IMG/VR virus record: IMGVR_UViG_3300003322_000571
Span: 124,001 to 188,000 of that record
Length of the DNA stretch: 64,000 bases
Reading direction: 5' to 3' (one strand)
This document shows positions 16,896 through 60,492 of the stretch, piece after piece (positions within the stretch are counted from its first letter, which is position 1; every line of letters starts with the position of its first letter). The position numbers and the translations under genes were made by a program. Under the pieces are notes generated by a model. It did no database searches and was not told the origin of the DNA. It saw nothing but the letters and a program-made list of their open reading frames with translations.

Positions 16896-17002
16896 CTGCT
16901 AAACAAGCACTTGAGCGAGCTCGAATGGCTCGTGCTCGGTCGTACTACGTTGCACTGATGAAACAACTTGGTGTGCGCCAGTTGACGTTGTTCCTTGTTT
17001 GA
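16892..17002 (+). CDS. Small basic peptide (36 aa)
   Basis: ATGA overlap; MTAKQALERARMARARSYY... Confidence 0.45.
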   Translation: MTAKQALERARMARARSYYVALMKQLGVRQLTLFLV

Positions 17003-17033
17003 GGGTCTGGGTAAAAATACTCAAAAGTGACCC

Positions 17034-17076
17034 GTTGTTAAGTCACCTAGTTTTACATATAGTTGACTTCAACAAC
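17034..17076 (+). promoter_or_regulatory. Hairpin-enclosed promoter
   Basis: TTGTTA-17-TATAGT; GTTGTTAAGTCA/TGACTTCAACAAC arms. Confidence 0.6.
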
Positions 17077-17112
17077 TGAGGAAATGTTCCTCGCAACGAA
17101 AGGAGAGAGCAA

Positions 17113-17298
17113 ATGCGTCATCCCGCACAGGGCAAACCGAATCGTTCTGAAGAAGGACGTGCCCAACGTGCCGCTCGCCACGCCCGCGCTGGCCGCCTGC
17201 AAGAGGTGCGCAACCGCGAGCTGGAGGCCGCTGACGACGCATTCTCCGATGGTGATCACGAGGCCGATGTCTGGGCCGATGAGCACGAGCTCGCGTGA
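17113..17298 (+). CDS. Small hypothetical protein
   Basis: AAGGAGAG RBS. Confidence 0.7.
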   Translation: MRHPAQGKPNRSEEGRAQRAARHARAGRLQEVRNRELEAADDAFSDGDHEADVWADEHELA

Positions 17299-17309
17299 TC
17301 GTTTCTAGT

Positions 17310-17705
17310 GACCACTAGTAAACATTAAGCCGGGCTTCGTGAGGTGGCCCACCGATGCAGTAATCTTTTGTACGCTCAACATCAGATGACATACGGCATG
17401 AAGGTGCTCAAGTAGCACCTGGGAGGCGCGCCGGCCGGACATACCGCGCCGTGGCCGGCGCGCAACTCCCAAACCTGCACAGCGGCAAGCATTTCGCCCC
17501 GCAACCGACAACCAGTGAGTCACGACATAGTGCGTTACGCATAGGGCTTTTGACATGTGCCCGCCCCGAAGTCTAACCGATGGCCATAGGGTCGCTCGCC
17601 GGGATGAAAGCGAGCACACACTAACCAAGTGGTAACCGAGTGCGCTGGCGACCGGAATTGCTGGCGCATTCAACATTTCCAGACTTCGAATTCAGACTAG
17701 AAAGG
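17310..17705 (+). ncRNA. Structured non-coding RNA or long leader candidate
   Basis: Several strong stems (17402-17420, 17421-17470, 17638-17671 with 4 G-T pairs). Confidence 0.45.
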
Positions 17706-17710
17706 TCTAC

Positions 17711-17893
17711 ATGTCCCGCAATTCCAAGAACGCCAAGCGCCACATCGCCGAGAAGGCCGCCTCCACCCAGCGCGTGAAGGGCGACAAGGGCCCCACCAAG
17801 ACGACGCCGAAGCACGGCAAGAAGAAGGCGTGGTGGCAGCTGTTCCCGTCGTACGAGGCGTACATCAAGGGCGCCAAGAAGCAGAAGGACTAA
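17711..17893 (+). CDS. Small Lys-rich basic protein
   Basis: GPTKTTPKHGKKKAWWQ; strong codon bias. Confidence 0.8.
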   Translation: MSRNSKNAKRHIAEKAASTQRVKGDKGPTKTTPKHGKKKAWWQLFPSYEAYIKGAKKQKD

Positions 17894-17923
17894 GCGGTTC
17901 TCCGCACTGTCGCTGCAGACACT

Positions 17924-17950
17924 AAAGGGCTCAACAGAGCCCTTTTGTTT
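17924..17950. terminator. Bidirectional-type intrinsic terminator
   Basis: AAAGGGCTC-AACA-GAGCCCTTT. Confidence 0.8.
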
Positions 17951-18045
17951 TGTCCGCACTATAAGACAGTGAGGCGCTCTCGCCGTCCATCCCGCGTTAG
18001 CTTCGAATCATGTGGTGATTATATTCGAAAGAGGGTAAAAGTCAA
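17950..18045 (-). ncRNA. Candidate sRNA family X copy 2 with promoter
   Basis: TTGACT-16-TATAAT then CATGATTCGA...GGGATGGACGGCGAGAGCG, running into the terminator. Confidence 0.6.
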
Positions 18046-18079
18046 CGAGAGAATTTGCCGGGCGGCGGGGGCGCCCCCG

Positions 18080-18108
18080 TTGTCAACTTACTCTGGTTGT
18101 GTGATAGT
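18080..18108 (+). promoter_or_regulatory. Sigma70-type promoter
   Basis: TTGTCA-17-GATAGT. Confidence 0.65.
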
Positions 18109-18139
18109 TGACTCATCAGTTAACAACCACGAGAACAAA

Positions 18140-18445
18140 ATGACGTTCGAACAAGAGCTGTCGGTCATCGAACAACTGTTCGGTGTCAAGATCGAAATCC
18201 AAGCCGCGCCGGGTTCGCCTGTGTGGTACACCTTCAGTGGCCGACAGTTGACGGTCGAATGCATCGAGGGCATCATCACGCAGAACAGCGGGGTGCTTGA
18301 GTGGCAAGACCCGTTGTCGTGGCATTGCAACAACAACGACAATGTCGCGTACCTGGTGGTCAAGCTGACCGACACCGATGAAGATGTCGTGTATGATCGG
18401 CTGTTCGCGTTCGACTTGACCGACAACGAATTCCACATTGTCTGA
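18140..18445 (+). CDS. Hypothetical acidic protein
   Basis: ORF from MTFEQEL. Confidence 0.7.
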   Translation: MTFEQELSVIEQLFGVKIEIQAAPGSPVWYTFSGRQLTVECIEGIITQNSGVLEWQDPLSWHCNNNDNVAYLVVKLTDTDEDVVYDRLFAFDLTDNEFHIV

Positions 18446-22719: not shown

Positions 22720-23073
22720 ATGGCCAAGATCGTTACGAAAGATTCCCTGCGAGACCTGCTGCTGAGCTCGCCTCAAGACAAGCAGGTCCGAATCATCGGT
22801 CGCGCTCTCGTTCGGATCATGGAGCGGCAAACGGAAGCCGAAAAGAGCCTGAAGATGACAACCGATTCGAACAACATCGGTTTCACCAGTGCAGATGCGA
22901 AGACGGGAACCAAGTCAGCGGAGTACTTCAAGCGGACTGGCCGTCTGATGCCGTTCGCGTTCGAGCGGTGGATCAGTGCTGACAGCACCGGCTATCCTCG
23001 GATCTGCCGCTACCATCGTCAACTCAACGAAGTCGCTGAGGCAAAAGCCGAAAGTGCCCAGTTGACTCTGTAA
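22720..23073 (+). CDS. Hypothetical protein
   Basis: GAGG RBS; N.IGFTSADA..G motif. Confidence 0.8.
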   Translation: MAKIVTKDSLRDLLLSSPQDKQVRIIGRALVRIMERQTEAEKSLKMTTDSNNIGFTSADAKTGTKSAEYFKRTGRLMPFAFERWISADSTGYPRICRYHRQLNEVAEAKAESAQLTL

Positions 23074-23098
23074 CCAAATGGGAGTATTATACTCCCAT
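23062..23098 (+). promoter_or_regulatory. Hairpin promoter class A
   Basis: TTGACT-17-TATTAT inside ATGGGAGTA-TTA-TACTCCCAT. Confidence 0.85.
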
Positions 23099-23116
23099 CA
23101 ATCAACGGAGTGCGAA

Positions 23117-23410
23117 ATGCAATTCTCGAAGGAACAGCTGATCTACATCGCGAGCAGCCTCGGCAACATGGACGTTGACTTCATGAAGCAGCTGGCGTGG
23201 GGAATGGTCGCCAATCACGCGGAAGTGATGGCGGAAATCTCCGAAAGCAGCGACATCCATACGCTGCCGAACACGAAGGACACCAAGGAACACGTCAAGG
23301 AGTACCTGTCCGACATGTTCCCGGAAATCCTCACGAAGCTGAAGGAGGAGATCGACGCGTGCCCGATCAACGTCAAGTACTCGTGGAGCGTCGACGTCAA
23401 GATGGAATGA
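23117..23410 (+). CDS. Acidic hypothetical protein
   Basis: GGAG RBS. Confidence 0.75.
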   Translation: MQFSKEQLIYIASSLGNMDVDFMKQLAWGMVANHAEVMAEISESSDIHTLPNTKDTKEHVKEYLSDMFPEILTKLKEEIDACPINVKYSWSVDVKME

Positions 23411-48680: not shown

Positions 48681-48739
48681 CGCGTATAGGGTTAGGTTAC
48701 ATAGTTGACTGGTAACTTTTAACTGAGGTTGTCTAACCC

Positions 48740-60170: not shown

Positions 60171-60242
60171 GGGGGATTAGTATAGCTGGGAAAACACCGC
60201 CCTTGCAAGGCGAAGTCACCGGTTCGACCCCGGTATCCTCCA
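60171..60242 (+). tRNA. tRNA-Ala(UGC), CCA not encoded
   Basis: Acceptor GGGGGAT/ATCCTCC with G3-U70, loop CTTGCAA, T-arm ACCGG-TTCGACC-CCGGT. Confidence 0.92.
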
Positions 60243-60392
60243 CAGTATCTCAAGAAGGCCTGTTAGTACGTGCTCTAAGCGTCTTCTTTCACTGACTCGC
60301 ATAGAATGCAGAGAAACATCACGTAAATGTCTCTGTAGACCACTAGCGAAAGTCGTTTAGTCGATGGTTACGGTGCAAGCCCGGAACAAAAT

Positions 60393-60466
60393 CGGAGTAT
60401 AGCGCAGCCTGGTAGCGCAACTGCTTTGGGAGCAGTGGGTCGGGAGTTCGAATCTCTCTACTCCGA
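60393..60466 (+). tRNA. tRNA-Pro(UGG), CCA not encoded
   Basis: CGGAGTA/TACTCCG acceptor, loop TTTGGGA, GTTCGAATC T-loop. Confidence 0.95.
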
Positions 60467-60492
60467 CATAATATAACACAGCGAGATTGTAC

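What the first reader, a model, noticed from the sequence alone, without database searches (positions are those of the whole stretch)
17310..17710. 400-nt highly structured RNA in front of a small Lys-rich protein
Seen: AGGTGCT/AGCACCT; GGGAG-GCGCGCCGGCC/GGCCGGCGCGC-CTCCC; GCTCGC/GCGAGC; a 14-bp stem with four G-T pairs (17638-17671); and AGAC/GTCT enclosing the AAAGG RBS. It matches no tRNA, tmRNA or RNase P signature that I can see. Inference: a novel ncRNA or cis-regulatory leader, possibly bound by the basic 60-aa product (RNP or autoregulation).
Basis: partly seen in the sequence, partly recalled or inferred. Interest (0 to 1): 0.6.

Follow-up and report, generated by a model that had tools for sequence, protein, structure and literature searches.

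The report
Structured mRNA leader with conserved pseudoknot
The 412-base gap in this 350-kb phage genome is a real, conserved, folded RNA leader in front of a small basic protein gene, built around a 36-base pseudoknot that matches no Rfam family and recurs in seven other uncultured phage lineages; its function is untested.

Summary
The region (17299-17710) is non-coding. It folds better than shuffles, with z = -3.5 on the + strand.

Relatives show selection for structure. In the closest lineage (L018/L019) the large GC hairpin carries 4 compensatory double changes and the 14-bp hairpin carries 3.

Only a 36-nt kernel (17543-17578) is shared widely. It is an H-type pseudoknot found in 8 phage lineages, always directly upstream of a homologue of the 60-aa protein (ORF-B). 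Both helices covary: 92.7% of cells are paired, against 34-38% when the partners are slid.

In five lineages a sigma-70-like promoter sits at the start of the gap, and a terminator follows ORF-B where one could be checked. The element is therefore best read as a long 5' UTR, not a free-standing RNA gene. Many ORF-B homologues lack it.

There is no Rfam match in any of the six lineages searched. ORF-B matches no Pfam, PHROG, NCBIfam or PDB entry and is predicted to be disordered.

The most likely role is a translational operator, possibly autogenous. That is inference. No RNA reads could be obtained. I file it as a new member of a known kind.

The parts
17035..17063 (+). Sigma-70-like promoter (TTGTTA-17-TATAGT) upstream of ORF-A. 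It is the likely start of the transcript that carries ORF-A, the leader and ORF-B in this phage.
   Evidence: 9 of 12. The same box is found in L018 at 496-524. It shares ATAGTTGACT with the next promoter at 18080-18108.
17113..17298 (+). ORF-A, 61 aa, arginine-rich, with the motif R..RL..VRxRE. It is conserved upstream of the leader in 6 of 8 lineages and was not seen where the leader is absent.
   Evidence: tblastn found no ORF-A in leader-less loci. No Pfam or PDB relative.
17299..17542 (+). 5' domain of the leader, shared only with L018/L019. It holds hairpin 17301-17323, a conserved block 17350-17400, hairpin 17402-17420 and the large GC hairpin 17421-17470.
   Evidence: Alignment A2 and RNAalifold show 4 double compensatory changes in the GC hairpin, and a U-A to U-G change in the first hairpin. 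Identity to L018 is 85-90% outside the hairpins. There is a decayed promoter remnant: GTGACC here, against TTGACC-17-GATAGT at the same place in L020 and L044.
17543..17578 (+). Conserved kernel, an H-type pseudoknot. S1 pairs 17544-17547 with 17559-17562. S2 pairs 17552-17554 with 17571-17573, plus 17550 with 17575. The loops are conserved: UGACAnGn and GCC[CA][CA][GA]AA.
   Evidence: Covariance model R1 scores 49 bits here and 40-58 bits in 7 other lineages. It is single-copy in the 350-kb genome.
17594..17615 (+). Hairpin directly 3' of the pseudoknot: GCTCGC, a loop starting CGGGA, then GCGAGC.
   Evidence: L020 has CGCTAC, a loop starting CGGGA, then GTAGCG at the same place, that is different stem letters with the same loop start. 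Type-B lineages have a CCTCGG...TTAGAGG hairpin here whose inner stem covaries: GCAT/ATGT, GCACA/TGTGT, GTAGT/ACTAT.
17638..17671 (+). 14-bp hairpin with four G-U pairs. It can form only on the + strand RNA.
   Evidence: L018/L019 carry a different hairpin at this place. RNAalifold counts 3 double and 2 wobble changes.
17681..17688 (+). AGACTTCG, an 8-bp alternative partner for 17567-17574 (CGAAGTCT). That segment overlaps the 3' strand of pseudoknot helix S2, so the two pairings exclude each other.
   Evidence: It is part of the minimum-free-energy fold. The duplex is better than shuffles here (p = 0.008), in L019 (p = 0.04) and in L028 (p = 0.002), but not in the 5 other lineages. It is lineage-specific at best.
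17694..17708 (+). Small hairpin AGAC/GTCT that holds the Shine-Dalgarno sequence (GAAAGG, 17700-17705) in its loop and 3' arm. The start codon is at 17711.
   Evidence: It is identical in L018/L019, so there is no covariation test.
17711..17893 (+). ORF-B, 60 aa, Lys-rich, with a conserved N-terminus MSRNSKNA and the motif GP..T.PKHGKKKAWWQ. This is the gene the leader precedes.
   Evidence: Homologues are. GC3 is 0.97. No Pfam, PHROG, NCBIfam or PDB match. The ESM Atlas model has pLDDT 0.43.
17924..17945 (+). Intrinsic terminator that ends the ORF-B transcript.
   Evidence: 9-bp stem followed by a T run. It is conserved in L018. Equivalent terminators follow ORF-B in L028 and L073.

Best explanation
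The gap 17299-17710 is the long, folded 5' untranslated leader of the mRNA for ORF-B, a small basic protein of a 350-kb phage. Its conserved kernel is a 36-nt H-type pseudoknot (17543-17578), followed by a hairpin. The remaining hairpins are lineage-specific.

Shown:
- The region is non-coding.
- Its hairpins are kept by compensatory substitutions.
- The kernel recurs in 8 divergent phage lineages, only in front of ORF-B homologues.
- Both pseudoknot helices covary, while the loop sequences are nearly invariant.
- Promoter-like and terminator-like sites bracket leader plus ORF-B as one unit in relatives.

Inferred:
- The pseudoknot is a recognition site for a trans-acting factor that sets ORF-B translation or mRNA life.
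- The most economical candidate is ORF-B itself, that is autogenous control like T4 gene 32 or ribosomal-protein leaders.
- In this phage, binding could shift the balance between pseudoknot helix S2 and the alternative helix 17567-17574 / 17681-17688, which lies 10 nt upstream of the ribosome-binding hairpin.

The confidence of 0.6 is for 'cis-acting structured leader with a functional pseudoknot'. I put autoregulation by ORF-B specifically at about 0.3.
For: Non-coding:
- The only long frame is the minus-strand one at 17305-17676. Its GC by codon position is flat (0.60, 0.54, 0.60), whereas neighbouring genes have GC3 of 0.6-0.97. It has no family hits.

Structure:
- z = -3.5.
- Four G-U pairs in the 14-bp stem, and U-A to U-G changes, fit only the + strand.
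- Window against L018/L019 shows 10 pairs with double compensatory change. Divergence is concentrated in the hairpins (50-62% identity), while the rest is 85-94% identical. For comparison, third codon positions of the flanking ORFs are 82-85% identical.

Kernel:
- R1 scores 40-58 bits in window, L018/19, L020, L024/25, L027-36, L044/53, L073 and L084.
- 92.7% of cells are paired, against 34-38% when slid. The covariation score is 0.285 against 0.089 +/- 0.025 in shuffles, with 0 of 500 shuffles as high.
- S1 pairs vary as GC/AU and as CG/GU/AU. S2 pair 13-38 is GC in 6 sequences, CG in 3 and UA in 2.

Linkage:
- Two lineages (L044/L053, L084) were found by a DNA pattern alone, and L073 by a pattern built partly on type-B sequence downstream of the kernel. 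All three again lie directly upstream of an ORF-B homologue.

Transcription unit:
- Promoter-like sites sit at the start of the gap in L028 (11 of 12), L084 (11 of 12), and L044, L024 and L020 (9 of 12 each).
- Terminators follow ORF-B.

Precedent:
- The T4 gene 32 operator is a 5' pseudoknot that acts as the nucleation site for its own product (PMC535899).
Against: - There is no transcript evidence.
- The window itself has no good promoter between ORF-A and the leader. Cotranscription from 17035-17063 is assumed.
- The sample is small: 8 lineages and 11 distinct kernel sequences, so the covariation statistics are modest. Only 3 of 10 pairs show double changes, and 28 of 500 shuffles reach that count.
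- S2 is weak in the window: 3 bp, a U-U mismatch, then 1 bp. L018 carries a G-to-A change that breaks one S2 pair.
- The pseudoknot lies 90-200 nt from the start codon, depending on the lineage, so how it reaches the ribosome-binding site is unclear.
- The alternative-helix switch is not conserved across the family.
- Loop-to-start-codon pairing is no better than chance.
- About 13 ORF-B lineages have no leader at all, so ORF-B does not need it.
- Nothing here tests protein binding.
Confidence: 0.6

Rival explanations
1. A free-standing stable non-coding RNA. It would be processed out of the transcript, work in trans, and perhaps form an RNP with ORF-B or ORF-A. Its position before ORF-B would reflect co-expression rather than cis control.
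For: - The loop sequences are highly conserved, as in RNAs recognised by partners.
- The 5' domain is 85-90% identical between the window and L018, as high as coding DNA.
- ORF-A, an arginine-rich helix like RNA-binding peptides, co-occurs with the element in 6 of 8 lineages and was not seen without it.
Against: - No terminator or processing signal separates the element from ORF-B.
- The promoter-leader-ORF-B-terminator layout is monocistronic in L028, L084 and L073.
- The element never occurs away from ORF-B and is single-copy.
- L020 and L084 lack ORF-A.
Confidence: 0.12
2. A riboswitch. The pseudoknot would be an aptamer for a small molecule or ion, with an architecture like the preQ1-I or SAM-II class, and would control ORF-B.
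For: - It is a compact H-type pseudoknot with covarying stems and near-invariant loop and junction nucleotides, with an A-rich third loop. From general knowledge, that is the typical signature of pseudoknot aptamers.
- In most promoter-bearing lineages it lies about 30-50 nt from the predicted transcript start (L073 by eye); in L020 it lies about 190 nt downstream.
Against: - No Rfam riboswitch model matches, even at permissive E-values, in the six lineages searched.
- The controlled gene is a small disordered basic protein with no metabolic or transport role.
- The ribosome-binding site is 90-200 nt away and is not part of the pseudoknot.
- No conserved expression platform was found.
Confidence: 0.1
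3. A leader peptide. A short upstream reading frame starts at the ATG inside the kernel (17555) and encodes MCPPRS..., 26 aa here. The Pro-Pro-Arg stretch would stall ribosomes and so control the downstream fold or ORF-B translation.
For: - The ATG is present in 5 of 8 lineages: window, L018/19, L028 group, L044 and L073.
- The variable positions of loop 3 read in that frame as CCC/CCA (Pro) and CGA/AGA/AAA (Arg/Arg/Lys), that is synonymous or conservative changes.
Against: - The ATG is AAG in L024 and L084, and ACG in L020. L024 and L073 are close relatives that differ at exactly this codon, yet the rest of the kernel is kept.
- The peptide's length and C-terminus are not conserved (13, 18, 20 and 26 aa), and a 1-nt indel shifts the frame between the window and L018.
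- The changes that alter codons 2 and 3 are matched by compensating changes in S1a, which lies outside the frame.
- There is no well-spaced ribosome-binding site.
Confidence: 0.06
4. A passive element. It would be a 5' structure that only protects the mRNA from decay, or a DNA-level feature such as an origin, operator or recombination scar, with no specific regulatory recognition.
For: - GC-rich hairpins of similar sequence (GCGCCGGCC/GGCCGGCGC) occur at different places in different leaders, upstream of the kernel here and downstream in L073.
- The 5' domain folds equally well on both strands.
- A perfect palindrome, CTAGTG-AC-CACTAG, sits at 17305-17318 and could be a protein operator on DNA.
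Against: - G-U pairs and wobble-preserving changes are strand-specific.
- Loop nucleotides of the kernel are conserved across phages of 44-57% GC, which a generic stabiliser would not need.
- There are no iterons or AT-rich unwinding region, and the element is single-copy.
Confidence: 0.08

Closest known systems
Translational operator of phage T4/RB69 gene 32 mRNA (5' pseudoknot recognised by gp32)
   Same: - It is a phage mRNA leader with a compact pseudoknot towards its 5' end, upstream of the ribosome-binding site.
- The gene encodes a nucleic-acid-binding protein that represses its own mRNA (PMC535899).
- The pseudoknot is likewise present in some relatives and absent in others.
   Different: - The T4 pseudoknot is about 28 nt and is followed by an unstructured region of more than 40 nt with UUAAA repeats, which gp32 coats cooperatively. 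Here the interval to the ribosome-binding site is 90-200 nt of hairpins.
- There is no sequence likeness.
- ORF-B is a 60-aa disordered basic protein, not an OB-fold single-strand-binding protein.
- Binding is untested.
Autoregulatory leaders of bacterial ribosomal-protein operons (for example the S15 and S4 pseudoknots)
   Same: - Small basic RNA-binding proteins are controlled by structured, often pseudoknotted, 5' leaders of their own mRNA.
- Such leaders are narrowly distributed and often missing from Rfam (PMC3616713, PMC5100602; listed, abstracts only).
   Different: - In those systems the pseudoknot includes or abuts the start site. Here it does not, and loop-to-start pairing is at chance level.
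- ORF-A and ORF-B show no detectable likeness to S21, Sra or any other ribosomal protein.
H-type pseudoknot riboswitch aptamers (preQ1-I, SAM-II and similar)
   Same: The order of elements is the same: stem 1, short U-rich loop, stem 2, short loop, stem 1, A-rich loop, stem 2. The size is similar, about 36-41 nt. This comparison rests on general knowledge of those classes.
   Different: - No Rfam model matches.
- The ribosome-binding site is not within the pseudoknot.
- The downstream gene has no link to any metabolite.

Membership tests
Any Rfam 15 family (tRNA, tmRNA, RNase P, 6S, group I/II introns, riboswitches, GOLLD/ROOL/HEARO and others) | A covariance-model score at or near the family's gathering threshold | tested here: not met
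   The gathering search of the whole window returned only two tRNAs, near 60.2-60.4 kb. The permissive search of 16900-18150 returned only chance-level snoRNA and miRNA hits outside the element. The same holds for relatives L018, L024, L028, L044 and L020.
Cis-regulatory 5' leader (translational operator) | Lies on the same transcript as the regulated gene, on the same strand, between the promoter and the start codon | tested here: inconclusive
   Promoter-like sites sit at the start of the gap in 5 relatives, and terminators follow ORF-B. The G-U pairs fix the + strand. These are consensus matches only, the window lacks its own promoter there, and no reads were available.
Cis-regulatory 5' leader (translational operator) | Conserved association with one gene family | tested here: met
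   All 8 lineages with the kernel have it directly upstream of an ORF-B homologue. Three lineages were found by DNA patterns rather than through ORF-B. The kernel is absent elsewhere in the 350-kb genome.
Cis-regulatory 5' leader (translational operator) | Structure maintained by covariation | tested here: met
   double compensatory changes in S1, S2, the GC hairpin and the 14-bp hairpin. Slid-partner controls give 34-38% paired cells, against 92.7% for the proposed structure.
Cis-regulatory 5' leader (translational operator) | A trans-acting factor, here proposed to be ORF-B, binds and changes expression | not testable with these tools
   No tool for RNA-protein binding was available. Only indirect facts exist: ORF-B is basic and its model has pLDDT 0.43.
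Group I intron splitting one gene into ORF-A and ORF-B | The flanking ORFs are halves of one protein, and an intron core (P3-P7, G-binding site) is present | tested here: not met
   ORF-B is a complete gene with its own conserved MSRNSKNA start in more than 20 loci that have unrelated upstream genes. There is no Intron_gpI hit. ORF-A and ORF-B show no likeness to any single known protein.
Riboswitch | Match to a known aptamer class, or a gene context pointing to a ligand | tested here: not met
   There are no Rfam matches. The downstream gene has no metabolic annotation. Ligand binding itself cannot be tested here.

The most novel reading that the evidence does not exclude
The kernel is a new class of phage riboregulator. 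The pseudoknot would mimic the natural RNA target of a previously unrecognised family of small basic phage proteins (ORF-B). That target may be a tRNA or rRNA feature, because ORF-B sits beside the CCA-adding enzyme gene in five other lineages. Alternatively, it could be a new aptamer that senses a host factor. Either reading would point to the function of a protein family that occurs in many uncultured phages, several with genomes above 300 kb.
Probability: 0.15. Interest if true: 0.7.

Novelty: new member of a known kind. Interest (0 to 1): 0.5.

Why it matters
Large phages carry many small genes of unknown function, and little is known about how they are controlled after transcription. This is a compact RNA motif supported by covariation and tied to one such gene family. 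It gives a concrete handle: a 36-nt pseudoknot that can be mutated, probed and used as bait. If ORF-B binds it, the motif would show what kind of RNA this widespread basic protein recognises. Even if it is only a leader, it is a candidate new RNA family, with 8 lineages for a seed alignment.

Tried and rejected
1. Minus-strand 123-aa ORF (17305-17676) as a real gene: rejected. GC by codon position is flat and there are no family hits.
2. Remnant of the CCA-adding enzyme gene, which precedes ORF-B in other phages: rejected. tblastn finds nothing in the gap, and the phage has an intact copy elsewhere.
3. Repeated element or promoter class: rejected. The region and the kernel are single-copy in the 350-kb genome.
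4. ORF-A as an S21-like protein and ORF-B as an Sra/S22-like protein: these were likenesses recalled from memory and were not confirmed by Pfam, NCBIfam or PDB profile searches.
5. Split gene plus intron: rejected (see the membership test).
6. Pairing of the kernel loop (GACAUGU) with the start-codon region (ACAUGUC): complementary by eye in 3-4 lineages, but no better than shuffles.
7. A family-wide alternative helix for the S2 3' strand: significant only in the window/L019 and L028.
8. Pairing between the candidate minus-strand small RNA and the leader: the site is not kept in L018.
9. Alignment of whole leaders across distant lineages: only S1 is recovered, so no family-wide model of the 3' hairpins could be built.
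10. Exact-word scans and most hits were chance matches. They score 29 bits or less with R1 and have no ORF-B.
11. INPHARED phage records: no DNA or protein match.

Full report
**Setting**

The window is bases 124001-188000 of a 350,089-bp viral record with direct terminal repeats. It is a tailed phage, with a tail-fibre protein and a NinI-like phosphatase nearby. The finding lies in a stretch of many small + strand genes. That stretch (about 11.5-38 kb) has a higher GC content, about 0.55, than the rest of the window, about 0.46-0.49.

**The observation**

The gap runs from the stop codon of a 61-aa ORF (ORF-A, 17113-17298) to the start of the 60-aa Lys-rich ORF (ORF-B, 17711-17893).

- The whole gap on the + strand folds to -154.2 kcal/mol, z = -3.5 against dinucleotide shuffles. 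The minus strand gives z = -2.0.
- By halves, the 3' half prefers the + strand (z = -2.6 against -1.3). The 5' half does not (z = -2.8 against -3.0).
- Rfam finds nothing, even at E <= 10. ARAGORN finds only two distant tRNAs.
- The one long frame in the gap, on the minus strand (123 aa), has flat GC by codon position, unlike the real genes around it, and no family hits.

**Relatives**

Nine viral-contig loci with ORF-B homologues (L002-L010) have no long leader. In four of them ORF-B follows a CCA-adding enzyme gene, and L038 shows the same arrangement.

The word-based protein search gave closer homologues. Their contigs showed the same architecture in L018/L019: ORF-A, a 401-nt gap, then ORF-B at 84% identity. 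L020 has a 463-nt gap.

Window against L018/L019:
- The leader is 77% identical overall.
- The divergence sits in the two big hairpins (50-62% identity). The rest is 85-94% identical.
- For comparison, third codon positions of ORF-A and ORF-B are 82-85% identical.
- RNAalifold finds 10 pairs with changes on both sides that keep the pair.
  - Four are in the GC hairpin: GGGAG/CTCCC becomes GGAGA/TCTCC, and GCGCGCC/GGCGCGC becomes GCGCACC/GGTGCGC.
  - Three are in the 14-bp hairpin, which is replaced by a different hairpin.
- Single-side changes are U-A to U-G or C-G to U-G. Those work only on the + strand.

**The shared kernel**

Reading the upstream regions of further ORF-B homologues showed one block common to all leaders. 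In the window it is 17543-17578: GGGC, then UUU-UGAC-AUGU, then GCCC, then GCCCCGAA, then GUC.

- A degenerate pattern for this block found L044/L053 in metagenome contigs.
- Two other patterns found L073 and L084 in viral contigs.
- In each case an ORF-B homologue starts 90-200 nt downstream.
- Covariance model R1 scores the eight lineages at 40-58 bits.
- R1 scores pattern-selected chance hits at 29 bits or less. It finds nothing in the ORF-B loci without a leader.

I counted pairs for a pseudoknot in which S1 pairs columns 1-5 with 22-26 and S2 pairs columns 13-17 with 34-38:
- 92.7% of cells are paired, against 34-38% when the partners are slid by 1-3 columns.
- The covariation score is 0.285 against 0.089 +/- 0.025 in shuffles (0 of 500 as high).
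- S1 pair 3-24 is G-C in 10 sequences and A-U in L020.
- S1 pair 5-22 is C-G in 8, G-U in 2 and A-U in 1 (the L028/L029 group).
- S2 pair 13-38 is G-C in 6, C-G in 3 (L018, L019, L084) and U-A in 2 (window, L020).

The loops barely vary. The sample is small, and S2 in the window is only GAC/GUC plus one more pair across a U-U mismatch. I treat S1 as established and S2 as probable.

A hairpin follows the pseudoknot in every lineage:
- CCUCGG...UUAGAGG with a covarying inner stem in L028, L044 and L084. The same outer stem encloses a larger insert in L024 and L073.
- A hairpin whose loop starts CGGGA in the window, L018 and L020, with different stem letters.

Beyond that point the leaders cannot be aligned.

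**Transcription unit**

The consensus scan puts a sigma-70-like promoter at the very start of the gap in five relatives:
- L028: TTGACA-17-TAGAAT, 11 of 12.
- L084: TTGACA-17-TACAAT, 11 of 12.
- L044 and L020: TTGACC-17-GATAGT.
- L024: TTGATC-16-TATGAT.

L073 has TTGATC-17-TAGGAT, which scores 8 of 12 and falls below the tool's cut-off. The same box is repeated in front of its ORF-A.

The window and L018 have only a decayed remnant at that position: GTGACC, with GATAGG in L018. They probably rely on the promoter in front of ORF-A, at 17035-17063.

Terminators follow ORF-B in the window, L018, L028 and L073. So the element is best read as a 5' UTR. In most promoter-bearing lineages the pseudoknot lies about 30-50 nt from the predicted transcript start; in L020 it lies about 190 nt downstream.

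**Mechanism**

What is shown is a structured, conserved, gene-linked leader. How it acts is inference.

In the window, the segment 17567-17574 (the end of loop 3 plus the S2 3' strand) can instead pair with 17681-17688. That site is 10 nt upstream of the small hairpin that holds the ribosome-binding site. The duplex is better than shuffles here and in L028, but not in five other lineages. A switch between the two pairings is therefore possible here but is not a family feature.

Pairing of the kernel loop with the start-codon region is at chance level.

ORF-B is basic, is predicted to be disordered (pLDDT 0.43) and has no known relatives. By analogy with T4 gene 32 and the ribosomal-protein leaders, the simplest model is that ORF-B, or ORF-A, binds the pseudoknot and limits its own synthesis.

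ORF-A is an arginine-rich helix that co-occurs with the element in 6 of 8 lineages. Two lineages have the element without ORF-A (L020, L084). About 13 ORF-B lineages have neither.

**The upstream frame**

The kernel contains an ATG (17555) that opens MCPPRS... in five lineages. Three lineages have AAG or ACG there while keeping the kernel. The peptide tails differ, and the codon-changing substitutions are compensated in S1a, outside the frame. I therefore rank this reading low.

**Verdict**

The RNP or autoregulation half is plausible but untested.

The element is a new RNA family of a familiar kind. No transcript data could be obtained.

Noticed in passing
window 17921-18047, minus strand: A candidate small RNA gene convergent with ORF-B. 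A near-consensus promoter, TTGACT-16-TATAAT, lies on the minus strand at 18045->18018 (11 of 12) and is also present in L018. The stretch 17925-18047 is about 97% identical between the window and L018, higher than the flanking ORFs (84-86%). The transcript would be about 90 nt and end at the shared hairpin 17924-17945. Its fold gives z = -2.9.
   Followed up: partly
window 17113-17298 (ORF-A) and its homologues in L018, L024, L028, L044, L073: A small arginine-rich protein with the motif R..RL..VRxRE travels with the leader in 6 of 8 lineages and was not seen next to leader-less ORF-B genes. It has no Pfam or PDB relative. It could be a second RNA-binding partner.
   Followed up: partly
L005, L007, L008, L009, L038 (loci of ORF-B homologues): In five other phage lineages ORF-B lies directly after a CCA-adding enzyme (PolyA_pol) gene. 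A Metallophos phosphatase is also often nearby. In this phage the CCA-adding enzyme is about 118 kb away, at genome position 22954-23316.
   Followed up: partly
window about 11500-38000: This block of about 26 kb has GC 0.51-0.60 in most 1-kb bins, against 0.44-0.50 in the rest of the window. It is made of many small + strand ORFs with their own promoter-like and terminator-like sites.
   Followed up: no
window 17059-17068, 18104-18113, 48701-48710: The exact 10-mer ATAGTTGACT overlaps the -10 box of promoter-like sites at the first two places. Its count in the window is not above chance (5 matches with up to 1 mismatch, against 3.1 expected).
   Followed up: partly
window 60171-60243 and 60393-60467: Two phage-encoded tRNA genes, tRNA-Ala(UGC) and tRNA-Pro(UGG).
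   Followed up: no
window 17421-17470; L073 9497-9530: Very similar GC-rich hairpins (GCGCCGGCC...GGCCGGCGC) occur upstream of the kernel in the window and downstream of it in L073. The hairpin may be a movable module within these leaders.
   Followed up: no
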